Assembly (NCBI RefSeq): GCF_003704095.1
Contig: NW_020847472.1
Location: 248,001 to 312,000 of the forward strand
Direction: 5' to 3'
Length of the DNA stretch: 64,000 bases
DNA from: Pocillopora damicornis
Taxonomy: Eukaryota
The translations under genes were made by a program, and so were the position numbers. Below the pieces are notes generated by a model that saw only the letters and a program-made list of their open reading frames with translations, searched no databases and was not told the origin of the DNA. Positions 26,982 through 41,821 of this stretch are shown piece after piece (positions within the stretch are counted from its first letter, which is position 1; every line of letters starts with the position of its first letter).

Positions 26982-29900
26982 ATGAATCTTACAGTGTTGA
27001 AATTGGTTGTTTCTGCCGGTTCCTTCTTTACGTGTCTTTCTTTAATTTTCACCGATGTGTGCCTTTTGGGTCGACAAGATTGTTTACCAAGCGCAAGGAG
27101 CTTCCAGAAGAAACTGGTTGGCTCTTTGGAGCGACTGTTTTTTCTGAGGTCCGGCGGAGACCTCGATCTTGACGAAGAGATCTTTGACATGTCAAAAGGA
27201 CTAAACCACCATGTTTGGGAATACAACTGTTTGAAGAGCATTGAAGCCCTTTGCAATTTCCCAATCTTTCCTAAAGCACCGGATAAAAGAGAAATAATAT
27301 CACGAACAGAAATCACTACGCGGAGCCGTCGCCGCGTGGATGCCCATCGTTTACTTGGTTTTTTGGTTCCAAATTTATCAGGTGAACATCTCTTCGCGGT
27401 AACATCGAATGGTTTTGCTGAAGTCTGGCTAAGTCCTGATAAAAGTTGGAGGTCGGCAAACCAGATTGCTTACATCAGGCAAACTGATTTGAAATCTACA
27501 ACAAAAAAATGGGACTTTGAGGCTGTAAAATCACAGATTTCCGCCGGAGTTTATTTAGAGGCGAGAAAACGATATTTCATTGAGATCGTGTACTCCCTTG
27601 GAGGTCGCAAAAGAGGCGAGAACTTTCTGCAAGTCGCCTGGAAACGACCAGGAAAATCCACGTTTGAGATTATTGAGAGCGAATCACTCTCACTGTATAC
27701 AAATGACAGTGAGAAGGACAAGTACAAAACCTATGACGATCGTTTACCCAAAGCTCACTACTGTGCAAAATATCAGAAAAGCTACGCAAACAAATATATG
27801 AGATCAGAGCCATATCCTAGCTTGGATAATTCCGCCATTAGTGGTGCTTTACCATTTTGTGACTACAGTCCTAGCTATATTCTCAATCCTGCTAAATTAG
27901 ATGGGTTTGAAAAATACCATGGCGTAAAAAAACATGTGCATAAAACGTACGGTTACCCATATCCAAATATTGATGGCATTATCAGAAGTCACACGGCGCA
28001 TAACGTGTTTTTGGCTGAGGATCCCTTAGAAGAGGAAGAAGCGTGGTCCGTGGTTGAGGCGTATATGGAAACTGTGGAAAAAAGCTATCCAGGGTAAGAA
28101 TTTGAGATTTTTTAAATTTGAAACTAGCCTTTCTTTGTGAGCAGTCGTTGACCATTCGTGTATTGCCATTTGTCAATCCTTGATCTTTCCTGACTGTCGT
28201 TGCTTGTTAGTTCTTTTATTTATTTGCTCGTTCGTTCGTCACTTCCGTAACTCGTTCGTTCTTTAGTTTTGCCGGTCGTCGCCGTTGTCGTTCGTTCGGT
28301 CGTTCGTGTAGTCGTTCGTTCGATGCGACGTTCGAAGATTCAGTCGGAAGCTTAGAATACCTCCTCGAATTCTGGGAAATCGTGCCAAAAGAGGATAATG
28401 ATAATGCAAGAAAAACCAAGCAATAAGTGTAATAAATTTGATGTTGTATAATGGTTACTAATAGGCTAAGTCAGGTCTGGCTGATCTACACAATGTGAAG
28501 TGGAGATCAATCTATGATCCACACTTATGATTGAGTAAAACATTATTTCAACAGGAAATATGAACTTGAGGATATCATTCGCGTTGAAAAAAAGAAAGAT
28601 CCCGAGAAAGGAAATAGATATCTTCTGGAGCTTGCTGTAAAAGATCTCACAAACTTTGATGGCTATATTTTATCGGAATATATTTTTAAACCGAAAGATA
28701 GAAGTGAGTCGTTGTGCTATCCCAGAGGCCTACAATGGAACAGGACAGCAGATGTCTATCTGATTCTCACGGTCAAGAACTTGGGTCGGTGGGTTCATCA
28801 CTTTATCAAGAACGTGGAAGAAATTGTACGAGAAACGAAAGATGAACACTTACATGTGGTTATATTTGACTTTAACAGCCCAGATATTGACTTAGAGCAC
28901 GTTTTGAGAAGAAGCAATCTGAGGAACCATCATTATATCTCAAAGCCTGGTAATTATTCGCGCACAGTTTCCTTAATGGAAGCTATAAAGTCAATAGATG
29001 ATCCTGAAGCCATTGTAGTAACCATTGATTTGCATCTGGATATCGGAAGTCAGATGATTAACGACATACGTAAGGTAGGGACGAGGAACTCCTTGAAATG
29101 GACTGTTGCAAATCACTTACCTCAAAAGTAATCGCAAAAGCCAATTAGAACAAAGTTCACATGACCCAAAGGGCTAGATAGAACTCTAAATGAATGAAAG
29201 TCACTCTTTATCACCGAGAAGGNNNNNNNNNNNNNNNNNNNNNNNNNNNNNNNNNNNNNNNNNNNNNNNNNNNNNNNNNNNNNNNNNNNNNNNNNNNNNN
29301 NNNNNNNNNNNNNNNNNNNNNNNNNNNNNNNNNNNNNNNNNNNNNNNNNNNNNNNNNNNNNNNNNNNNNNNNNNNNNNNNNNNNNNNNNNNNNNNNNNNN
29401 NNNNNNNNNNNNNNNNNNNNNNNNNNNNNNATTATATGGTTGTCAGGGGGAACAAAGGTGGGATCAGTCGTGGCCAACAGAGTATAAATGGGAGACTAAA
29501 GAAAATTGACTGCCAATTAATTGCCAATAAGGAGTGTTATGGTAGTTTTACAGAGCCTTATGAAGAATGGCCAAATTTTTCATTTTTATCATGACACAAC
29601 CAGCCCCCACCCCACCCCTACTACAGCGATTAATTATGACCGGTTCCAAAGCTGTGTTGGGAAGAAATCATAGCCGTATCAATGTTGGCTTCTGAGTAAC
29701 CAATTAAATTTTTCACCTTGTTAGCATTTTTGAGTTTTTTTCAGCCTCCTCGAAATATAAACCAAAAGGGAACAGTCCCTTGAGTACGATTCAAGTTTTT
29801 GATGGCATTTCCAGGCTTGACTCCTACGTTACACAGACTTTTATTGAAGTTTTAACAGTTTTTCACGTTCTTTTCAGCACTGTATCAAAGGAAGGACCGT

Positions 29901-30171
29901 CTATGCTCCCCAAATCATCTTTCTAAATTGTGGTGGAAGCAGTGCCCTTCCCAGAGGCTCATGGTACCACTACAGCTATGGAACAGTTGCTATGTATAAA
30001 GAAGACTGGGAAAAATTTGGAGGCTTTTCACAGGGTTTTGTTAACAAAACCACGTGGGGAGGAGAGGACTGGGACATCATTGACGGCGCAGTCAAGGGTG
30101 GCCTGGAAATAGAAAGGAAACGATCACCATGGGTCTATCATTATTACCACACCAAATATGGAATGTGGTAA
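26982..30171 (+). CDS. Beta-1,4-N-acetylgalactosaminyltransferase 3/4-like paralog A (type II membrane, PA14 plus GT7), about 641 aa. Exons 26982-28093, 28555-29074, 29878-30171
   Basis: N-terminal TM segment. LCNFPIFPKAPD and RLLGFLVP..G.H.F..TSNGFAEVWLS..QVAWKRP (PA14). GNRYLLEL, LCYP.GL.W and VKNLGRWVHHFI. Metal-binding DLH and WGGED, both characteristic of B4GALNT3/4. GT-AG junctions with phases 2 and 0. Intron 2 contains an assembly gap. Confidence 0.92.
29223..29430. other. Assembly gap (N run)
   Basis: Run of N. Confidence 1.
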
Positions 30172-31316
30172 TCGTAGGAATGAGTTATTGGCCAAATTTG
30201 ACGCCAAGGAGACTAGGAACGAGGTTTAATATCCAGCTAGGCTGAAACCAATCTGCCGTCACCTTAACTAACAGGAGGAGGCGGGTGGAAGGGGTTGGGG
30301 AAACGAACTCGAACGTGAAGTACGACTGTCGTTAAACCCAACAATTGCTCCTCGAGTTTCGAAGAAAAAGTATTTGTAAATCTGCACAGTACTCCTCGAT
30401 GAGCTGGACTTTAAGTAAACGAGAACTGAATACTTGTCACAGAAGAGTTTTAATTTGTACAGTTGGTCTGATGAAAATAGTTGAGCATATTACAAAGAGA
30501 CGCCCTTGATCGCCACTTTCGCTTGGCTTTACGCCGTAAACTTCATATTTGTGCTGCTTATATAGTAAACAAAAACACCCAGATATTGATCATTAATATG
30601 TTATAATTTTATTTTTCAGTACAATATGACGAATGTGAAAATGACGCATGACTAATACTTAGAATTTCAAATTAAAACAGCCTATAAAGGTACCGATGGG
30701 ATGAGATTTTATATAATACTTACATATAATTCTATACAATTTTTTTTTTATCATCTCTTGCATATCAGTTACGTTGACTATCCCTCCGAAATACCAAGAG
30801 TGAGTAAGCAACCCATTGCCTACGTCTTCAGTACTTGGGAACAGCTAATAAAAATAAAAAATGTTTGCAGCCTAGAAGATACTTTACAACCTTTAAAATT
30901 CAACATTTGCTTATGCTGGTCACCATCCTGGTTGTGCTGATTGATCCTGATTGTGGTCGGTGGCTAAGAAGGAACAGGGGATCCGTTAGGGTGGAGTTTG
31001 GGTTGGGTGTGCTGTAAAAGACTCTGACTCTCTTTGGAACGAATTTCTTTCATTTTGCTATGTTGTTAAGACTAAGAATTATTAAGAATTGTGTTATATC
31101 GCCATCATGTATCCAGTTCTGGGATGGAGAGACAATATGTTTACAATTAGATTAAAAATGTGTTGGTGCTGCGCTGGTAGATCTACTTCCCCCCCCCCCC
31201 CACTCCTCCTCACTCCTCCCCCCTTCCACGGCCCAACCGAAACATGCTAGCCATAAACAAGATCTTTAAACTTGATCTACAGATTTTGGCTGGATGGTTT
31301 CTCCGTCATTGGTATT

Positions 31317-34300
31317 TTATAGCCACATTCCTGCTTTAGTGTGGTAATAATGGTAAATATATGGGCTTGGCTTGCGCTCTATTTCCAGGCCACTCTTGAC
31401 TGCGCCGTCAATTAGATCCCAGTCCTCGCCTCCCCATGTAACTTTTGTCTCGAAATACTTAGAGAATCCTCCAAATTTGTCCCAGTCCTCCTTGTGCACT
31501 GCCACAGTTCCATAGCTGTAGCGGTTCCATTCCCCTATGGGAACAGCACTAGTTCCGTCACAGTCAAGAAAAGCTATCTGTGGAGCGTACAATGTTTTGC
31601 CTCTGATGCAATGCTGAAATGACAATATGACAGCAAAGAGACCTTCAACTTTTAACCCCTAGAAGTGATTAACATGTAATTTCTCCCTATAGATATCTAT
31701 ACATCATCCCGCATATAGGTAAAGGGAATACTGAAACTTATGGGGTGGAAGATGTTATCTTGATCTGACACGAAATTCTTGCAAATATTTTAGAGGGGAG
31801 AATTTTAAAACACAAGCAGATGTTGGGAGTTAAAAGGTTAACAGACGATCAAGTTTGTTGACTTAGGCGCACTTGCCTCAACTATCCATTACGTAGTTAG
31901 ATAATGACTAACACCTAAATGATAATGTTAATAGTCTAACCCAACCCCTGAGAAAATCCCACCCACACCCCAGTACCCTCTCTCCAATTACCTTGCGTAT
32001 ATCGTTTATTGCTCGGCTCCCAATATCCAGGTGTAGATCAATAGTAACAATAATGGCATCTAAGTCCTTTATTGATGCCACTGCTTCACTTATGGCAATA
32101 CTGCGAGAATAATTACCAGGTTTTCTGATAAAATGATAATTTTTCAGAGTGCTTCGTTTCAAGGCCTGCTCTAGATCAATATCAGGGCTATCGAAGTCGA
32201 AAATAACCACATGTAAATGTTCGTCTTCCGTCTCTAGCATGATTTCTTCTACGTTTCTGATAAAATGGTGAACCCATCGACCCAGGTTCTTGGCGGTCAG
32301 AATCAGGTAGACATCCACATTCCTGTTCCACAGCAGGCCACTAGGGTAACACAATGGCTCACTTTCATCTTTCGGTTCAAAAACATTTTCTGCCAGGACA
32401 TAACTGACGTCTCTTGGGATATCTTTGACGACAAGTTCGAGGAAATATTTATTACCTTTTCCGGGGTCTTCTCTTCTTTCAACGCTAATAACAGATTGGA
32501 GTTCGTATTTCCTGGATGGAGAGGGTTAGTACTTAGTGTTGATTGAAAAATTTCTGCATTTGGGGACCAGTGATCATTTACTGTCTGGGAGGAGGGGGTG
32601 AGAGATTTTGCAAGGATCACATGGTTTTCAGGGGGGGAACTGAGTATAAAGGGGGGAACCATAGATAATTTTTTACCAATTTACTGCAATGAGGGGGGCC
32701 ATAAGAACATTACAGAGCCTTATGGGGAGGGGGGGTGTGGAATCAGATAAAATTTATCGTGACGCAAACAAAACTCTCCAATATCCCCTCCCCCGAAGAC
32801 AAATAATGACTGCTCCCTGAGCCTTAATGAACGTTAAATATTTACCATCTCTGGTGGAAGTGCCCGTTGTTACTTTCACGAGTAATTTGGAACAAAGAAG
32901 ACAAAAAAATGCAAACAAAGGAGCCGAGGAAAGTAATAATTGTAAAGCAAAGAAGAACTGCATAGGAGTTTTACACCAAGGTAAACCCTGAATTCATAAC
33001 AATAACCTCAACTTCAGCTTTCTACGAAAAGCAGGTAAATTCAACGCAGAAAAGTTTGAATATATGTCTGCTATACTTAATTAAAATAAAAAGGAAAGAG
33101 GTCGCTTGAACTTTTTTTAAATTAAGTATAATTGTATGCAAAATTTCACTCTCAACGTTGCCTTACAGCTTCGCGTAGAGCATGCGCAGTGCTAATTGCT
33201 TTACAATTTTTTATTTTTGAGTGAGATTACTTAAGACTTCAAGCCGGATGCAAAATGTTTGATTTTCCTTTCAAAATTTTTTATATCCTGTTTCTTTAAT
33301 TTTCCGAGTGAGAATTTATATTTTACATTATTATTTCTGGGGTGACTTATTAAAATGTCTAGAAGTGTGGGCGTTTTCATGACAAGTTGCTAAGTAAAAC
33401 AAACATTTCGGAGACAATTAACTAGATTGGATTATTCGTTTTGAAGGTAAATCTGCTCAAGAATAGAACAACCATAATCCAAGTTATACGCTGTTTATTT
33501 TTTTTTTAAGCTGGCTGACGGCTACAGTATGGAGATTAGTTATATTCTAGTATCCAGAGACGTATTCCAAACTGCTTATTATTCCAAAACTCAAAAGGTA
33601 CATTTTTATGAAAAATCTGGTTTGTTCTGTTTTGATTTGTTTTCATAATCATAGCATAAGGCGCAAAACGTATAAAACAAAGAACTTAATACTGTAACAA
33701 AAAGAAAAACAAGTGTCCGTTAAAGACACTCAAAAGAGCTCTTACGGGTGGAAGGCCTCACATGAATAAATCTCAATTTGTCATGAGTTTGCACTCCCAT
33801 TCACCTAAAAATAAAAATGCATCGGTGTGTTTGATTAAACTTACCCGGGGAAAGCTCCACTCAACTCCTCGAAGTATTTGTTTATAACTGAAAACGCTGT
33901 CTCTTCCTCGAGGAAAAATATCATCTCCTCGAAAGCCATTCTCGTTCCATTCAAAGGCGGGTAAACATTCGTTCGTTGTACATATAGTGAAACACCATAA
34001 TACATTTGAAAGTCAGATGGCAGATTTTCCGGATCGATGAGGTAACTGGGGCTATAGTCACATACCTCTAAAACTTGGTCCACAGCAGCTCGTTGGAGGT
34101 ATGGAAGCTTCTCTGGCCTCAAGAACTTGTTGGTAGACCTTCTGTCGAATTGAGCACAATAAAGTGCACCTGGCAATTTGTCATCGTATACTTCAAATTC
34201 ATATTTTTCGTCATCGTTCGTGTATGGTGAGAAGAAAGCTCCATCAATCACATCGAATCCGTCAGCGCTATTGAGTCGTTTCCAAGAGATTTGTATCAAC

Positions 34301-35356: not shown

Positions 35357-36517
35357 CTGGTGAAAATTACGCCATTCATCGCGAAATGAAGGAGACGTGA
35401 TGGTGGAAATGCACCCAGTAACAATTGTTTTTGAATTTTTATTTCGATGTCTTTCAAACGAGAAAAGTAATATATCTCAGAAATGGCAAGCCTCTCGGAA
35501 GTTTCTCTTGAACAATATAAATGAAAAAATTACAACAACTTGAAACAACAATAGATTGAAGTACTTGCCTACAAACAATTGGCAATGACTTGCAAGTGCT
35601 GGTGGTAACAATTTTCCACAACCGATCAAAATATTTTACTGTATTAAATAGTTTCGGATTAACAATACAATTCCAAGCAGACAATTGATAAGAATAAAGA
35701 AAAATATAAATAGGAGATTGTTAATTATTTGATCCATTACCAAATTCTCTGAAATAAGATCACAAGAATTGTAAGGCAGATAGTCAGGTGAATTACTAGT
35801 GAATTCAGTCCATAATAGCTACCATAGCGCGGCTCCATGCCGTAAATAAAACATTTGCTTCACAATTCATTAAATAAAAGTTAATTTATGCATTTAACGT
35901 TTGCATGTTTAAACATTGCTTCATAGTATAACGGGACGAAAACGAATATGACGGGTATAGGAGTAAGTAACGTAACTCATATTATTGTGGCAGGAAGTAT
36001 AATAAGACCTCTTCTCATAAAAGAACATATGGGATGACATTTGATCATGATTTTACCATAATGTTGAACGTTTTGGACAGGAGAGAGAAAATCTCTCAAG
36101 GGTCGCGCGCCCATTCGCTTATTTGCTCCTAAGTAGTAGAAGAAAGTTGTGTGCAATCTAGGTAAATCTTTACAATCATTAAGTATTCAACTTCTCTATC
36201 ACTACGCCTATGATATGGCGATTAAAATTCTGAAAGGAGGGTAGAAATGAGTTGAGAGAAGGGAGGGGTGCCGCTAAAGCTTACAAGCTTTGATCTTCTT
36301 CAAAACAAAATTATTTCTCTTGCTTCATTGTTCACGACGAAGAGCCATTAAGGATTGTCGCATATCGCCCTCATGAAGCCACGTTGAAATATTCAGAACG
36401 AATGTTTTAAATGCGATTTAAAAACTTGTTAGTACCACACTCGTAGACCACGTCTTCGTGTCCCAAAATAGTAAATTGAATACCTCGCTGGCCTTAAATA
36501 TGACCTTTAAACATGGA

Positions 36518-39500
36518 CTATGCCCTTTTCCTGGTTAGTTTTGCTGTCATTGGTATCGATTTTGCCATTTTTGGCTCAGGTTTTGCCGCTTTTGGCATCG
36601 GATTTGCCGCTTTTCGCATTAGTTTTACCGCTTTTGGCATCGGTTTTGCTGCTTTTGGCATCGGTTTTGCCGTTTTTGGCATAGCTTTTGCCGCTTTTGG
36701 CATCTGTTTTGCTACTTTTGGCACCGGTTTTGCCGCTTTTGGCATTGGTTTTGCCGCTTTTGGCGTTATTTGTGCCGTCTTTGGAGTTGGTTTTGCCCCC
36801 TTTGCTAATTTAGGCTTTTCAGTTTTTACCCACATTCCTGTCTTACTGTGGTAATAATGGTAAATCTTTGGACAGCGTGTGCGCTCTATTTCCAAGCCAC
36901 TCTTGACTGCGCCGTCAATTAGATCCCAGTCCTCGCCTCCCCATGTGACCTTTGTCTCAAAATCCTTGGAGAATCCTCCAAATTTGTCCCAGTCTTCCTT
37001 GTACACTGCCACAGTTCCATAGCTGTAGTGGTACCATCGCCCTCTGGGAACAGCACTGGTTCCGTCACAGTAAAGATAGACTATCTGAGGAGCGTGCAAC
37101 ATTTTCCCTTTGATACAATGCTGAAATGACAAAGTAACAGGATAACTAAACTTTTAACAGACGATTTATGTTACAGTTTATCGACTTTGGCGCACGCACG
37201 TTAATTTCCGATGACTAGTATTTTCAACAGGCAATAGTCCTGACATAAATGCATAGGAAAAACGCAAGAACCGACTGATTTCGCCGGGGCCAGGATGCTA
37301 CTGAAGTGCAAAGCACTATTGTTGACTCCTGTGCATGTTTTAGAAATGACACATACTTTGAAATTAATAAACGAATCTCCGAGCGAGTAGTTAATTGCAA
37401 ATAAACCTGCACGCAGGCTTTCATTGGTGGAGCGACAAAAGTTGCGAAGCCCGCGCTTCTCAAGCGAGCGGGGGTTTTGTAAGGGGGCACCGATGGTTCT
37501 AGTTCGAAAATGATCCCTCAAAGACATCCCTAGGGAGTTTCCTNNNNNNNNNNNNNNNNNNNNNNNNNNNNNNNNNNNNNNNNNNNNNNNNNNNNNNNNN
37601 NNNNNNNNNNNNNNNNNNNNNNNNNNNNNNNNNNNNNNNNNNNNNNNNNNNNNNNNNNNNNNNNNNNNNNNNNNNNNNNNNNNNNNNNNNNNNNNNNNNN
37701 NNNNNNNNNNNNNNNNNNNNNNNNNNNNNNNNNNNNNNNNNNNNNNNNNNNNNNNNNNNNNNNNNNNNNNNNTTACCTTGCGAATTTCATTGATAAGTTG
37801 ACTCCCAAGATCCAGATGCATGTCAATGGTTACAATAATGGCGTTTGGGTCCTTTATCGATTGCACAGCTCTACCAAAAGAAAGAGTCCGCGAATAGTTC
37901 CCAGGTTGCACAATTAAGTGATAGTTTATCAGAGAACTTTTTCTCAAAGCCTGTTCTAAATCAATATCTGGGCTACCGAAGTCAAATATAACCACGTGTA
38001 AATGTTCATCTTTTGTTTCCTTTACGATTTGCTCCACGTTCTTGATGAAATGGTGAACCCATCGACCCAGGTTCTTTGCAGTGAGAATTAAGTAAACATC
38101 CGCTGTCCTGTCCCACTGCAGGCCGCTTGGATAACACAAAGGTCCCGATAGAACCTTTGGCTGGAATACATATTCTGCCAAGATGTAGTTGGCGCCATTT
38201 GGAAGATATTTGACCACAAGCTCAAGGAGATATCTGTCTCCTTTTAGCGGATCTCCTTTCTTTTCGACGCGCCTGACTGACAAGAGTTCGTATGTTCTGA
38301 GGAAACACAAAAGAAGTTCAGATCTTTTGACATGCTTGTAGACTGCGAGCAGCCCCTCCTTTTTTAGGCGAATCCCGTCGCGCAAGTACTTTTTCCCGCA
38401 CGTCACTCTCAGAGTTCCGCGCGGCACGCTATTATCATTTTGTCTTCTAGGGGGTGATTTCTTTTACTCGCCTTAACGGACTTCGCCGAGAAGAAGGGAC
38501 TACTCCTTGTCTAACGCGCTGGAGGTCTGAAGAAAGCAACACTAACTGCTTCACAGGGTGACCAGGCCATTTCCAGACCAAAGTCCCGAAATTTACTCCT
38601 GCTGTGATTTCCATTTCTAATAAGCAGTCACCTCCGTTTAGCGGTTGTAATCACCCTTAACTTAGTCCGAACAGCCTGTTTGTATCGTTCTCCACCTGTA
38701 TAGAACGGTCACTTGCAGCGAAACCACTTAAATAAAGCTAAGAGTAACATTTCAAACAAAACTTAATCCGGCCATCTTTATCTCTCAAAACCAATATTAG
38801 GAGTATTTTTCAGTATTTTAGAGCGAGGTTTTGTAAATCAACTGGTCAATAATGGAAAAACATCGCGTCTTTACCGCTTTTATAATACTCTTATTCTTTA
38901 GAACCTGTATCAAGCGGTCAACCTGTGTTGAGCGGTTACCCCGTCATTCCCCACGGATAACCGCTTAAAACAGGTTCGACCGTGAAGCGGAAAAGATGCA
39001 ACCTTTGACCTTCGCTTGGCGTTGACTGGAAAATTATAGAGAGGATTCTCTTCAGGGTCACAGTTTCAGTAGTTCTAACAACATCACTCCTTTCGAGACC
39101 AAAGATAGTGTCCTTCTAATAATATAGTGCCCCGCATAGAAAAGTCCCAAATAAAGGATTTTACACTGTTTGACATTCCTTACCTAGGGTACATCCTCTT
39201 CAAAGCGTTGAAGTAATTTGTCACCACAGTCAATGCCTCCTTTTCATTCAAAGGGTATCCAGCTATGAAAGCTTTATTCGCAGTTTTCGATTTGATCACT
39301 CCGTTCAAGCTTTGAAATGGATACGTGTAAGTTTTTTGAACATACCTGCGCACACCGCGATAATGTTTAAAGTCGCGGGGTAAATTAGCCGGATCAAGAA
39401 GATAACTGGGTTTATAATCACAGATAGGAAGCGCCTCGTCCACGGCAGTTTTCTCTAAGTAAGGCAGTGCTTCAGGCCTCAAGTGCATGTTCGCAAATGT

Positions 39501-40295
39501 CGTCCGAGACTGCGCACAAGTGGGAGCTTTTGGTAACTCATCGTCGAGAATTTTCAATTTCGCCTTATCTATGTCCTTTGTATACAGTAAGAAGAACTTG
39601 TTATCGATGATCTCAAATCTACGACTATCTGGTCTTTTCCAAGCGACCTGAATTAAATGTTTGCTTCTCGTTGCATTACTCTGCGACTGAATGTAAATGA
39701 GTTCAAAATAGTATCTTCGTTTGGCGGCTAATTTCACGCTATCCGAAATCTGAGACTTTATACCCTCAAAGGACATCTTCTTCAATGGCGAACTTTGGGA
39801 CCGGATGTAAGCAATTCTTTGAGCGCCTGTCCAGTTGGCATTAGGACTTAGCCAAACCTCTGCCAAGCCATTTGAAGTTAATAAAAATTGATGTTCTCCA
39901 GAGGCATTCGGTCGAATGTAACCCAGCAATCTAATGACTCGATCGAGTCTTCCACGCTCTGAGATAATGTTGACATTTGGAATGTACTCTCTTGCATCCG
40001 GAGCCTTTGGAAAAATTGGGTAATTGCAGATTTGTTCGAGGCTGCTCTGGCAAAACTTTTCCCAAGAGTGTCTATTCAACCCGTGAAGAGTAACCTCGGA
40101 CTTGATGTCTACATCCAGTTCTATGTTGTAGATGTCTGGATTAGATATCAACAACTTGTCGCTTGTCCCAAGGATAAGCGTTGCGTTCGAGGAGATTTCC
40201 TGACGATTCAACAGATAAATCACAACTAATATGACCCAAAGACCGACTGTAGAAACGCCAAAATAAAATGCTTTCACTAAAATGACACGATTCAT
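36518..40295 (-). CDS. B4GALNT3/4-like paralog C, about 744 aa, with a 103-aa Lys/Ala/Pro/Met repeat tail. Exons 40295-39184, 38296-37777, 37120-36518
   Basis: Exon 1 is 1112 nt as in paralog A, and exon 2 is 520 nt. TM segment, PA14 region, DMH and WGGED motifs. The last exon reads past the position where A and B stop. Intron 2 contains an assembly gap. Confidence 0.9.
36530..36802 (-). repeat. Coding minisatellite, 13 imperfect 21-bp units (consensus peptide KAAKPMP)
   Basis: Plus-strand unit ttttgccgcttttggcatcgg repeated without frameshift. Confidence 0.93.
37544..37772. other. Assembly gap (N run)
   Basis: Run of N. Confidence 1.
38618..38985. mobile_element. Tc1/mariner-type MITE remnant in intron 1 of paralog C
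   Basis: Iterated aagcggtca(c)c motifs, with the inverted end accgcttaaaacaggttcgaccgt matching aacctgtatcaagcggt. Confidence 0.5.
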
Positions 40296-41821
40296 GGTCA
40301 GAGTAGAAAAATAGTGGTTTTTCCTCCAAAAAAGCGCGTTCCAATCTAACCTAGTTCTCGAAGCGACATAATGTATTCACCGGCAGTCTTATCTGGTGTA
40401 GGGTTGCATATACGGCGAATAATTTCCGGAACGACAACAATGTTTCACACATTTATTAACTCGGAACAGCCTAACCCCACAGAGATGCCCTCCCTATAGC
40501 CGAAGATTCACGACGAAATCTCGAAGGCCGAATATTGTCGCGTTACTGTTTATGTATCGGCAGTCCATCAGACTGTTAGCCGAAGGGCATGATAACATAC
40601 CCAGCGTCTCCAGTGCGTCATTTGGTTCCCAAAACACGACGTCGGATTGGGGACCAGACCTAAAGTGGGTGCGTTTTTAACACCATCACTCGATTGGCAT
40701 CAGTAAAATAGCACTATCTGTTTTTGGTTAAGCTCATTTCCGCTGCTCTATCTGAACTCCGATCTTGATAAGTATGGTCTCAAAAAGTCTGCTTTAGACG
40801 ATAATTTTGCTGCAAGAAGTTGCTCTCACAAGAATGTTCTACATTAAATAATTTGGATTTTTTCTCAAGTTGTTTGATTGCTCTTGTGGTATGCACTTAA
40901 GTTCTATAAGATTAAAAAAAGGCAAACATATTACAGAATATTCGAACTATTGTGTAAACCAAGTGACAACTTGGAGAGGAGCATCTATTCTGTCTGTTGA
41001 TGCCTTTGTTATTAAAGCGATTACGAACCAATCAATTTTCCTATATGACAGATCCATCATCCTGAAGAAGCTTTAAGTAGATTTCACAAATCATACACTT
41101 AATGGAAACGTTATGAACCCGAAAAGGTTACTTAATCTTTAATTAAAGGTAATAAAAGAGTAATATCTTGTTATGAAACGTTCATGACGTTTAGAATTGT
41201 TTCGATGACAGACACGAACGAATAAACAACCATGCAAAACATGCGGATTGAAAGATTCATCCATTCAGAGTGGAAACGTCCGGTTGTTTTGTTCTATTGA
41301 GTCCCTTTCTTTAAGAGCACTGGGGAGGCAGAGGTAAACAAATAAAAGGGCCATTTTGAAAGCGCCTCTCTACCGTAAAAAATTTATCCAAGAGGTTTAA
41401 AAATATCTCATGTAACGTACAGTTGTACATTAATTTGCACGTTAACAAACCAGAGTAGAGCTCCTTAACAAAAGTCACTGATCGTCAACTCATTAGCACT
41501 TGTAACTTATTGGACGGACTAATTAGCCAATTGCGGACACCGCATATTTTGTAGGTGAGGTAGCGGAAGGCATAATGCTCACTGACGGGTAGATTTGTAC
41601 ATTGTCGTGAAGTCGTACCCATTGTCGGTAACATTTAAGCCGTATTGGCCTCTGGAATTAGCTGCTTATTGATGCCAAGGAGTATTTTTAGCCGCGCCAA
41701 GTCTGATCGGATTTAATTCCCCCGGCTTGTGCAGCCGATGTGATTAGAGCGATATACTTGTTTACATAGGATAACGCAAAGCATACACAGTAGGGTTTAT
41801 TAATATCGGAACTCACTCAAC

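What the first reader, a model, noticed from the sequence alone, without database searches (positions are those of the whole stretch)
36521..36829. Glycosyltransferase paralog C gained a 103-aa polycationic (KAAKPMP)13 tail, apparently by stop-codon loss
Seen: paralogs A and B end at GMW* and GMWL*. C continues through 13 in-frame heptads with 27 Lys and 3 Arg against 2 Glu. At the junction B reads TGG CTA TAA and C reads TGG GTA AAA, suggesting a TAA-to-AAA read-through. The units have diverged by substitution yet keep the frame and the Lys/Pro register, which argues for selection on the peptide. In a type II enzyme this histone-H1-like tail is luminal. Inference: it could electrostatically capture polyanionic acceptors such as the poly-Asp SAARP encoded about 21 kb away or sulfated glycans, or drive condensation with them.
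Basis: partly seen in the sequence, partly recalled or inferred. Interest (0 to 1): 0.8.

Follow-up and report, generated by a model that had tools for sequence, protein, structure and literature searches.

The report
Lysine-rich repeat tail on coral glycosyltransferase
One of three neighbouring coral sugar-transferase genes really does end in a transcribed, about 100-residue lysine/proline/alanine repeat tail encoded by a 21-base minisatellite; the tail is shared with the coral Stylophora and is an expanded old feature of this gene lineage, not a recent stop-codon accident, and what it does is untested.

Summary
On the minus strand, exon 3 of paralog C runs past the family's GMW end for 103 more codons (36829-36521, stop TAG 36520-36518). 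The tail has 27 K, 3 R, 2 E and 0 D, and is built on a 21-bp tandem array.

It is real coding sequence:
- RNA contigs from four studies splice exon 2 to exon 3 across the N gap (GT..AG) and run unbroken through the repeat.
- The Stylophora pistillata ortholog (NCBI, 730 aa) carries the same tail. It has the same start, end and [M/I]-P-K-x-A-K-P register, and is two heptads shorter.
- Tara Pacific Pocillopora scaffolds carry 96- and 110-residue versions that differ by whole 21-nt units.

The proposed origin, TAA to AAA, is not supported. Related coral genes carry basic tails of 16-225 residues after GMW. Paralog B's TAA follows a 23-nt deletion, and its 3' flank still holds the decayed tail. 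So the tail is ancestral, B lost it and C expanded it.

Residue-level constraint on the tail is weak: pN/pS is about 0.6-1.2, against 0-0.39 for the enzyme body.

The tail is predicted disordered and luminal. The enzyme is B4GALNT3/4-like (PA14 + CHGN/GT7). Binding of polyanions is a plausible function but is untested. A link to the poly-Asp gene 22 kb away is speculation.

The parts
39183..40295 (-). Exon 1 coding part of paralog C (371 codons). ATG at 40295, N-terminal signal anchor, PA14 domain.
   Evidence: ORF and first Met. PA14 E = 8.6e-9. Splice junction 39183^38295 in RNA contigs.
37777..38295 (-). Exon 2 (173 codons), the N-terminal half of the CHGN/GT7 catalytic region.
   Evidence: Junctions in four RNA runs. 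92% identical to Stylophora P0045.
37544..37772 (.). N run inside intron 2. It was not filled. The donor GTAA at 37776-37773 abuts it.
36830..37120 (-). Exon 3, catalytic part (97 codons), ending HYYHSKTGMW.
   Evidence: Pfam Glyco_transf_7C 4.6e-12 and CHGN 1.5e-11. Acceptor AG at 37122-37121.
36521..36829 (-). 103-codon polybasic tail, in frame with the catalytic part of exon 3.
   Evidence: RNA contigs span it without indels. Orthologous tail in Stylophora.
36550..36804 (-). 21-bp coding minisatellite. Consensus ATGCCAAAAGCGGCAAAACCG, which reads MPKAAKP.
   Evidence: TRF. Consensus. Copy number varies by whole units.
36518..36520 (-). Stop codon TAG of paralog C. Its position after ...LTRK(R/K)A is shared with Stylophora.
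35438..36517 (-). 3' UTR of about 1.08 kb, running to an AATAAA at 35443-35438 on the minus strand.
   Evidence: RNA contigs are continuous from exon 3 to beyond 35700. Signal found. The 3' end itself is not mapped.
31317..31322 (-). Paralog B end: CTA TAA directly after TGG.
31265..31316 (-). Decayed remnant of the ancestral tail-coding sequence in B's 3' flank. The ancestral TAG at 31279-31277 is now out of frame.
   Evidence: Alignment to L007 gene 2 and to L010.
30169..30171 (+). Paralog A stop TAA directly after GMW.
   Evidence: The transcript-derived protein P0010 (99% identical to A) also ends at GMW.

Best explanation
Paralog C is a three-exon gene for a type II, B4GALNT3/4-like glycosyltransferase. 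It has a signal anchor, a PA14 domain and a CHGN/GT7 catalytic domain. By exon-wise count it has 744 codons.

Shown:
- The last 103 codons are a real, transcribed, in-frame C-terminal extension encoded by a 21-bp minisatellite.
- The tail is shared with Stylophora pistillata, so it predates the split of these two genera.
- Its length is polymorphic by whole units. Observed lengths are 89, 96, 103 and 110 residues, with an allele of one unit fewer in one RNA run.

Shown or strongly inferred:
- The extension did not arise by a TAA-to-AAA change relative to B. Basic tails after GMW are ancestral in the B/C clade of coral enzymes.
- B lost its tail through a 23-nt deletion.
- C lengthened its tail by tandem amplification of a K/P-rich 21-nt unit.

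Inferred:
- The tail is an intrinsically disordered polycation with net charge about +28. It projects from the end of the catalytic domain into the Golgi lumen or, if the enzyme is shed, the extracellular space.
- Selection acts on bulk properties (open frame, charge, proline spacing) and not on individual residues.
- The most likely role is a low-specificity tether to polyanions of the secretory pathway, such as sulfated glycans, acidic mucins or acidic matrix proteins. Such a tether would raise the local concentration of acceptor or hold the enzyme in an anionic matrix.
For: Transcription and splicing:
- Junctions 37120^37777 and 38295^39183 have GT..AG on the minus strand.
- One 1397-nt poly(A) RNA contig is identical to the window from the 3' UTR through the whole repeat to 37047.
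- One contig joins exons 1, 2 and 3 and runs into the tail.
- Depth in intron 2 is zero in all four runs laid; the intron 1 bin 38437-38597 is zero in three and 0.26 in X14, which also has low depth (0.9-3.8) further into intron 1. No indels lie in the repeat.

Conservation:
- Stylophora P0045 has an 89-residue tail with the same first three and last two heptads and the same stop position. P2, K3, A5, K6 and P7 of the heptad are shared.
- The Tara scaffolds differ only by 21-nt units and a few substitutions.

Ancestry:
- The trees place C with Stylophora, with B as sister. Tail-bearing proteins lie on both sides of them.
- Relatives carry tails of 16-225 residues with 21-38% K+R, against a 13.7% background.
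- B's flank is homologous to another coral's tail-coding DNA.

Disorder and topology:
- AlphaFold2 on the Stylophora ortholog gives pLDDT 31-36 and no secondary structure for residues 646-730, against more than 90 for the catalytic core. It predicts a helix at residues 2-35.
- A hydrophobic anchor is also found by hydropathy.

Precedent: the PA14 domain of mammalian B4GALNT3 binds sulfated glycans and regulates activity (PMC13018970, abstract).
Against: - No functional data exist.
- Residue-level constraint on the tail is weak. pN/pS is 0.61 and 1.22 on only 5-6 differences. The within-array nonsynonymous/synonymous ratio is 0.60, with CpG sites taking 13 of 28 changes. A tolerated, nearly neutral appendage would look much the same over short times.
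- Frame retention across unit indels is automatic for a 21-nt period.
- I could not obtain Stylophora DNA, so no dN/dS across genera was computed.
- DNA homology between C's tail and the short tails of outgroups is not significant. 'Expansion from the ancestral tail' therefore rests on phylogenetic position and composition.
- The RNA evidence is from assembled contigs. It shows neither strand nor rare isoforms, and nothing here shows the tail in the protein.
Confidence: 0.5

Rival explanations
1. The tail is translated but functionally inert. It is a fast-evolving low-complexity appendage that the enzyme tolerates. It is created and resized by replication slippage or unequal exchange in a coding minisatellite, and is kept open only because frame-breaking variants are mildly harmful or simply have not yet arisen.
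For: - Tail pN/pS is 0.6-1.2, against 0-0.39 for exons 1-3.
- Lys codons are no better conserved than other A/T positions (p = 0.43).
- Copy number is freely polymorphic.
- The sequence is 75% identical between genera, against 92% for the catalytic part.
- Paralogs A and B do without a tail.
Against: - The same heptad register, start, end and stop are kept in two genera.
- Long open, basic tails recur in several coral lineages with unrelated sequences and at least one other repeat period. This is hard to get by drift in a genome where 5.7% of random codons are stops.
Confidence: 0.32
2. C gained the tail recently by loss of the stop seen in B (TAA to AAA). The tail specifically captures the poly-Asp acidic protein encoded 21-22 kb away, or sulfated glycans, or condenses with them.
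For: - The junction codons read as described.
- A poly-Asp ORF with 29 consecutive Asp exists at 14025-14621.
- The tail is strongly cationic.
- B4GALNT3-like proteins were reported in a coral skeletal matrix proteome (bioRxiv 10.64898/2026.03.24.713908).
Against: - The tail predates the Pocillopora-Stylophora split.
- K at +2 is ancestral, and B's TAA follows a 23-nt deletion with a recognisable tail remnant downstream.
- Only genomic proximity links the two genes. The two Desmophyllum family members recovered here (P0039, P0040) fall in a different clade with 4-residue tails; whether they are the proteome's two proteins was not checked.
Confidence: 0.07
3. The tail anchors a shed enzyme in extracellular or skeletal organic matrix, either electrostatically or through covalent Lys cross-links. 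KAAK and KP motifs recall the elastin cross-linking domains that lysyl oxidase uses.
For: - The composition is K/A/P with regularly spaced Lys pairs.
- Family members were detected in a skeletal matrix proteome.
- The resemblance to elastin cross-linking domains is from my own knowledge, not from a test.
Against: There is no evidence that this paralog is secreted or cross-linked. The motif resemblance is compositional only.
Confidence: 0.07
4. The repeat is not translated as a tail. It would then be a 3'-UTR minisatellite, the antisense FG-like ORF (36513-36854, +) would be the real product, or the junction would be an assembly error at the N gap.
For: - All six frames of the array are open.
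- A gene caller picked the antisense ORF in one Tara scaffold.
- Contigs give no strand.
Against: - There is no stop between GMW and 36520, and RNA contigs are continuous with the spliced catalytic exon.
- The GT..AG orientation fixes the minus strand.
- NCBI's Stylophora model includes the tail.
- The non-repetitive tail ends are conserved in frame.
- The repeat is present in five independent assemblies.
Confidence: 0.03

Closest known systems
Vertebrate B4GALNT3 / B4GALNT4 (LacdiNAc synthases, CAZy GT7, PA14 + CHGN)
   Same: - The same domain order: signal anchor, PA14, then a CHGN/Glyco_transf_7C catalytic domain ending HxxHSKxGMW.
- The best named hits are 'beta-1,4-N-acetylgalactosaminyltransferase 3-like'.
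- A non-catalytic module in this family (PA14) is known to bind anionic, sulfated glycans (PMC13018970).
   Different: - The vertebrate enzymes sampled end 5-15 residues after GMW. The coral B/C clade has basic tails of 16-225 residues, and C has a 103-residue heptad array.
- The coral proteins are shorter, about 640 residues without the tail.
- The activity of the coral enzymes is untested.
Stylophora pistillata 'beta-1,4-N-acetylgalactosaminyltransferase 3-like' (P0045, NCBI, 730 aa)
   Same: It is the ortholog: 92% identical in exon 2 and in the catalytic part of exon 3, with the same tail start, end and heptad register.
   Different: - It is two heptads shorter.
- Position 4 of the heptad is T/F/I/M instead of A, with a 14-residue super-period. 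This indicates separate homogenisation of the two arrays.
- It is a predicted protein only. I found no paper describing the tail.
Histone H1 C-terminal domain
   Same: A K/A/P-rich, highly basic, disordered polycation. The composition of H1 is from my own knowledge.
   Different: The tail has no globular linker-histone domain, no S/TPKK motifs and no Pfam match. It sits in the lumen, not the nucleus. The resemblance is in composition only.
Polybasic region / PSTD of polysialyltransferases ST8SIA2 and ST8SIA4
   Same: A functional analogy. These are luminal polybasic segments of a Golgi glycosyltransferase that engage an acidic patch on the substrate and a polyanionic glycan. The source is my own knowledge plus the titles and abstracts of PMC12682141 and PMC7084582.
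   Different: Those segments are short, non-repetitive and lie inside the folded GT29 enzyme. Here the segment is a terminal repeat array on a GT7 enzyme. There is no sequence relationship.
Coding minisatellites (VNTRs) in secreted or luminal proteins, for example mucin tandem repeats
   Same: Head-to-tail units whose length is a multiple of three, copy-number polymorphism, degenerate edge units with homogenised central units, and a disordered product.
   Different: The array is attached to the C-terminus of an enzyme. It is basic and poor in Ser/Thr, not an O-glycosylation scaffold.

Membership tests
B4GALNT3/4-like glycosyltransferase (GT7, CHGN) | CHGN / Glyco_transf_7C catalytic domain above Pfam's cut-off | tested here: met
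   Exon 3 of C scores 45.8 bits for PF02709 and 44.3 bits for PF05679, against a cut-off of 23. The ortholog P0045 scores 60.3 bits for CHGN over residues 435-637.
B4GALNT3/4-like glycosyltransferase (GT7, CHGN) | PA14 domain N-terminal to the catalytic domain | tested here: met
   Exon 1 of C scores 35.8 bits for PF07691 (cut-off 24) over residues 118-232.
B4GALNT3/4-like glycosyltransferase (GT7, CHGN) | Type II topology (N-terminal signal anchor, luminal catalytic domain) | tested here: inconclusive
   A hydrophobic stretch lies at residues ~9-29 after a short basic N-terminus, and AF2 predicts a helix at 2-35 in the ortholog. I could not distinguish an anchor from a cleaved signal peptide. 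Either way the C-terminus is luminal or extracellular.
B4GALNT3/4-like glycosyltransferase (GT7, CHGN) | Residues invariant across the family are retained | tested here: met
   52 columns are invariant in the 23-sequence alignment that includes vertebrate B4GALNT3/4, and all are present in P0045. C's exons 2 and 3 are 92% identical to P0045. I did not check each column in C.
B4GALNT3/4-like glycosyltransferase (GT7, CHGN) | Transfers GalNAc in beta-1,4 linkage to GlcNAc (LacdiNAc synthesis) | not testable with these tools
   This needs an enzyme assay. The coral clade is a lineage-specific expansion at 29-33% identity to the vertebrate enzymes.
Coding minisatellite (VNTR) | Tandem head-to-tail units with a period that is a multiple of three, inside a transcribed ORF | tested here: met
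   Period 21 with 10-12 copies. The array lies in frame in exon 3 and is covered by RNA contigs.
Coding minisatellite (VNTR) | Copy-number variation between individuals or lineages by whole units | tested here: met
   Tails of 96, 103 and 110 residues in Pocillopora-like assemblies. An allele lacking 36744-36764 in RNA run X14. 89 residues in Stylophora.
Histone H1 C-terminal-domain-like | Attached to a linker-histone globular domain; S/TPKK motifs; nuclear | tested here: not met
   No Pfam hit in the tail. There are no SPKK motifs, only a few TPK. The protein has a signal anchor. Only the composition is alike.

The most novel reading that the evidence does not exclude
Reef-coral LacdiNAc-synthase-like enzymes of one clade have repeatedly evolved long, disordered polycationic C-terminal tails: heptad arrays in Pocilloporidae, hexad-periodic and non-periodic K/Q/P tails elsewhere. 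These tails would work as electrostatic capture or condensation modules for polyanionic cargo of the secretory pathway, such as sulfated glycans or acid-rich skeletal matrix proteins. Copy-number polymorphism of the coding minisatellite would then tune glycosylation of mucus or biomineral matrix between coral lineages.
Probability: 0.2. Interest if true: 0.7.

Novelty: new variant of a known kind. Interest (0 to 1): 0.45.

Why it matters
Golgi glycosyltransferases are usually thought to pick substrates through their folded domains. A long disordered polycation fused to the catalytic C-terminus would be a different, charge-based way to target or retain an enzyme. Here it recurs across coral lineages and its length is polymorphic within Pocillopora. 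It sits in organisms whose mucus and skeletal matrix are rich in sulfated and Asp-rich polyanions.

Members of this enzyme family have been found in a coral skeletal proteome, so the hypothesis can be tested by proteomics, binding assays and cell-type expression data.

Even if the tail proves inert, the locus is a clean example of three things in one tandem gene cluster: birth and resizing of a coding minisatellite, loss of a tail by deletion in paralog B, and misleading codon-level 'read-through' look-alikes.

Tried and rejected
- Stylophora DNA for a cross-genus dN/dS. The exact-protein look-up of P0045 found no record, so I could only compare at protein level.
- A full-length transcript-derived protein for C. 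The first search's length filter (224-714 aa) would have hidden a 744-residue protein. A second search with a longer query found none for this species, only the Stylophora ortholog.
- Homology of C's tail to the short tails of outgroup genes at DNA level. It is not significant (scores 9, 7 and 18, all within the range of shuffles). I therefore dropped my idea that the heptad's last Lys codon descends from the ancestral stop codon.
- Lys-specific selection within the array. It is significant against all other nucleotides (p = 0.026) but vanishes against other A/T nucleotides (p = 0.43). CpG decay explains the contrast.
- ESM Atlas look-alikes of the tail. The best score was 0.78, below any useful level. 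Pfam found nothing on the tail.
- Earlier findings of this scan. Only this same stretch and two unrelated notes came up, and the word search was blank.
- Synteny around a long-tailed relative (L008). It was uninformative because LINE insertions fill the flank.
- Dispersed copies of the repeat in the genome. There are none, so the tail is not a transposon-borne minisatellite.
- A solved structure of a close relative. Only chondroitin sulfate synthase 3 matched, at E about 1e-5.
Full report
**What is in the sequence**

The finding lies on the minus strand. Translating 37120-36518 gives the conserved end of a glycosyltransferase...HYYHSKTGMW, followed without a stop by 103 further residues and TAG at 36520-36518. 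The tail has 27 K, 3 R, 2 E, 0 D, 19 P and 22 A, for a net charge of +28.

Tandem Repeats Finder finds a period-21 array at 36550-36804, with 10-12 copies, 80-82% matches and 0-2% indels. The consensus unit ATGCCAAAAGCGGCAAAACCG reads MPKAAKP. Edge units are degenerate and central units are near-identical.

Two paralogous last exons lie nearby: B at 31613-31323 (-) and A at 29878-30168 (+).

One caution applies. The array is open in all six frames, and a 21-nt period keeps the frame through any whole-unit change. Openness inside the repeat is therefore weak evidence by itself.

**Gene model and transcripts**

All three paralogs are three-exon genes. For C:
- Exon 1 is 40295-39183. It starts with an ATG, a hydrophobic signal anchor and a PA14 domain.
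- Exon 2 is 38295-37777.
- Exon 3 is 37120-36518.
- Counted exon by exon this is 371 + 173 + 200 = 744 codons.

I laid Logan contigs of four RNA-seq runs from four studies on 35700-40500. They show the following:
- The junction 37120^37777 in all four runs, and 38295^39183 in all four runs (in X1 read as 38296^39184, with only 25 letters on the shorter side). On the minus strand both have GT..AG ends.
- Zero depth in intron 2 in all four runs; in the intron 1 bin 38437-38597, zero in three runs and 0.26 in X14, which also has low depth (0.9-3.8) further into intron 1.
- A 1397-nt poly(A)-library contig identical to the window from beyond 35700 through the whole repeat to 37047.
- A 1035-nt contig that joins exons 1, 2 and 3 and runs 95 nt into the tail.
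- No insertion or deletion in the repeat.
- In one run, a loose end that skips exactly 36744-36764, which is one unit.

The exon 2 donor GTAA at 37776-37773 abuts the N run at 37544-37772 but lies outside it. The gap therefore does not affect the exon or the tail. An AATAAA at 35443-35438 suggests a 3' UTR of about 1.1 kb.

Contigs cannot show strand, exact ends or rare isoforms. The strand follows from the splice-site orientation.

**Family**

Exon 3 matches Glyco_transf_7C and CHGN, and exon 1 matches PA14. Named relatives are 'beta-1,4-N-acetylgalactosaminyltransferase 3-like'. Vertebrate B4GALNT3/4 root the coral expansion. The closest solved structure by sequence is chondroitin sulfate synthase 3, and only distantly.

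**Orthologs and polymorphism**

The Stylophora pistillata protein P0045 (NCBI, 730 aa) is 92% identical to C in exon 2 and in the catalytic part of exon 3. It carries an 89-residue tail. The first three heptads, the last two heptads and the stop position correspond one to one with C. The arrays differ by a 14-residue gap. Heptad positions P2, K3, A5, K6 and P7 are shared, while position 4 is A in the window and T/F/I/M in Stylophora.

Tara Pacific metagenome scaffolds 98-99% identical to the window carry tails of 96 and 110 residues. These differ by whole 21-nt units plus 5-6 substitutions. Three further scaffolds break or have gaps inside the array.

The repeat is single-copy in the 234.35-Mb, 4393-contig assembly. 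That size and contig count match my recollection of a Pocillopora damicornis assembly, but I did not verify the species.

**Origin**

- In a tree of full-length relatives, C plus Stylophora, B, and three tail-bearing transcript-derived proteins form one clade (support 93/97). A is separate.
- An exon-3 tree places genes with 16-30-residue basic tails as the nearest outgroups of B plus C.
- ORF- and transcript-derived relatives from other corals have tails of 16-225 residues. They start xK and hold 21-38% K+R, against 13.7% in random frames of this window.
- Two of those tails have their own period of 6 or 18 residues.
- AAA at codon +2 is therefore the ancestral state.

B's 3' flank aligns to the tail-coding DNA of a B-type gene from another coral (L007 gene 2) with a score of 61, against 8.7 +/- 4.0 for shuffles (0 of 500). 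The alignment needs a 23-nt deletion right after TGG CTA. The ancestral stop, in the shared motif GTAGATC, is present in B, L007 and L010 but is out of frame in B. B therefore lost its tail, and its TAA is not positionally homologous to C's AAA.

The DNA of C's own tail shows no significant similarity to these short tails. That C expanded an ancestral short basic tail is inferred from phylogenetic position and composition. It is not shown base by base.

**Selection**

Against four Tara lineages, pN/pS is 0.18-0.39 for exon 1, 0.08-0.19 for exon 2 and 0 for the catalytic part of exon 3. For the tail it is 0.61 and 1.22, on only 5-6 differences.

Within the array, 19 nonsynonymous and 9 synonymous departures from consensus give a ratio of 0.60, and four CpG nucleotides take 13 of the 28 changes. 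Lys codons change less than the rest (p = 0.026) but not less than other A/T positions (p = 0.43).

Individual residues are thus barely constrained. What is kept between genera and across lineages is an open, basic, proline-punctuated tail. I could not compute a cross-genus dN/dS because Stylophora DNA was not retrievable.

**Physical nature**

AlphaFold2 on the Stylophora ortholog, run with a 23-sequence alignment, gives:
- pLDDT above 90 for most of the catalytic core;
- a helix at residues 2-35;
- pLDDT 31-36 and no secondary structure for residues 646-730.

The luminal body is itself basic, with net charge +14 to +19, so electrostatic fold-back of the tail onto its own enzyme is unlikely. 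The tail has no Pfam family and no useful Atlas neighbour.

**Mechanism**

- Shown: a transcribed, in-frame, length-polymorphic polybasic tail at the luminal end of a B4GALNT3/4-like enzyme, conserved in register between two pocilloporid genera.
- Inferred, at about one in three: it acts as a low-specificity tether to polyanions of the secretory pathway or matrix. A non-catalytic module of mammalian B4GALNT3, the PA14 domain, is already known to bind sulfated glycans and regulate activity (PMC13018970). The polybasic segments of polysialyltransferases are a functional analogy (titles and abstracts only, plus my own knowledge).
- Almost as likely: the tail is a tolerated, nearly neutral appendage.
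- A specific link to the poly-Asp ORF at 14025-14621 has no support beyond proximity.
- Two B4GALNT3-like proteins were reported in the Desmophyllum skeletal matrix (bioRxiv 10.64898/2026.03.24.713908). The two Desmophyllum family members recovered here (P0039, P0040) fall in another clade with 4-residue tails; whether they are the proteins in that proteome was not checked.

**Novelty**

The tailed protein exists as a database prediction for Stylophora. I found no paper that describes it. I rate it a new variant of a known enzyme kind.

**Limits and house rules**

- I did not fill the N runs. Some database hits (P0001-P0006) are ORF calls from other assemblies that run from exon 2 into the homologous intron. 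They were printed. I did not use them to infer the gap, and in the fetched scaffolds I used only exons, intron 1, the tail and the 3' UTR.
Searches, trees and charge counts were done exon by exon by reference. The Stylophora protein P0045 stood in for the full-length enzyme in the alignment and the structure prediction.

Noticed in passing
window 14025-14621 (+), also 15139-15162: A 198-aa ORF with 29 consecutive Asp (14169-14255), a hydrophobic N-terminus and 32% D+E. It looks like a CARP4/SAARP-type secreted acidic protein exon. A second run of eight Asp lies 1 kb downstream.
   Followed up: partly
window 29223-29430 and 37544-37772: Both N runs sit in intron 2 of a paralog (A and C), at comparable distances upstream of exon 3. 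This suggests the same hard-to-assemble intronic sequence in both copies. I did not fill or examine them.
   Followed up: no
window 31265-31322 (-): Paralog B's 3' flank is a decayed tail. There is a 23-nt deletion after TGG CTA, and the ancestral stop TAG at 31279-31277 is now out of frame. B's exon 1 is also much more diverged than exons 2-3. I did not check whether B is still functional or expressed.
   Followed up: partly
L007:1-20339 (another coral, long-read contig): The same three-gene arrangement is present: a C-like gene, then a B-like gene, then a convergent A-like gene. Here the C-like gene has exons 1-2 but no exon 3 within the 2.2 kb before the next gene. That interval holds a reverse-transcriptase-like ORF. 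Either the gene is broken there or it uses the downstream exon 3.
   Followed up: partly
window 36513-36854 (+); L003:4081-4443: The antisense strand of the array reads as a 113-aa Phe/Gly/Ala repeat ORF (GFAAFGI units). An automatic gene caller annotated that ORF instead of the tail in one Tara scaffold. It is a shadow ORF of the minisatellite.
   Followed up: yes
P0097 (136 aa, ENA): An unrelated small protein has an N-terminal (KPEPKAA)n heptad array followed by a DUF2188 domain. It matched only through the repeat, so it is a convergent K/P/A heptad, probably bacterial.
   Followed up: no
P0082 and P0090 tails (162 and 141 aa): Long basic tails of relatives from other corals have their own periodicity of 6 or 18 residues, with xQKE/xKEAP-like units. 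This indicates independent repeat expansions at the same C-terminus.
   Followed up: partly
window 36010 (3' UTR): A 3-nt deletion is shared by three of the four RNA runs. The 3' UTR is the most divergent part of the gene between Pocillopora lineages, at 2.5-3.6%.
   Followed up: no
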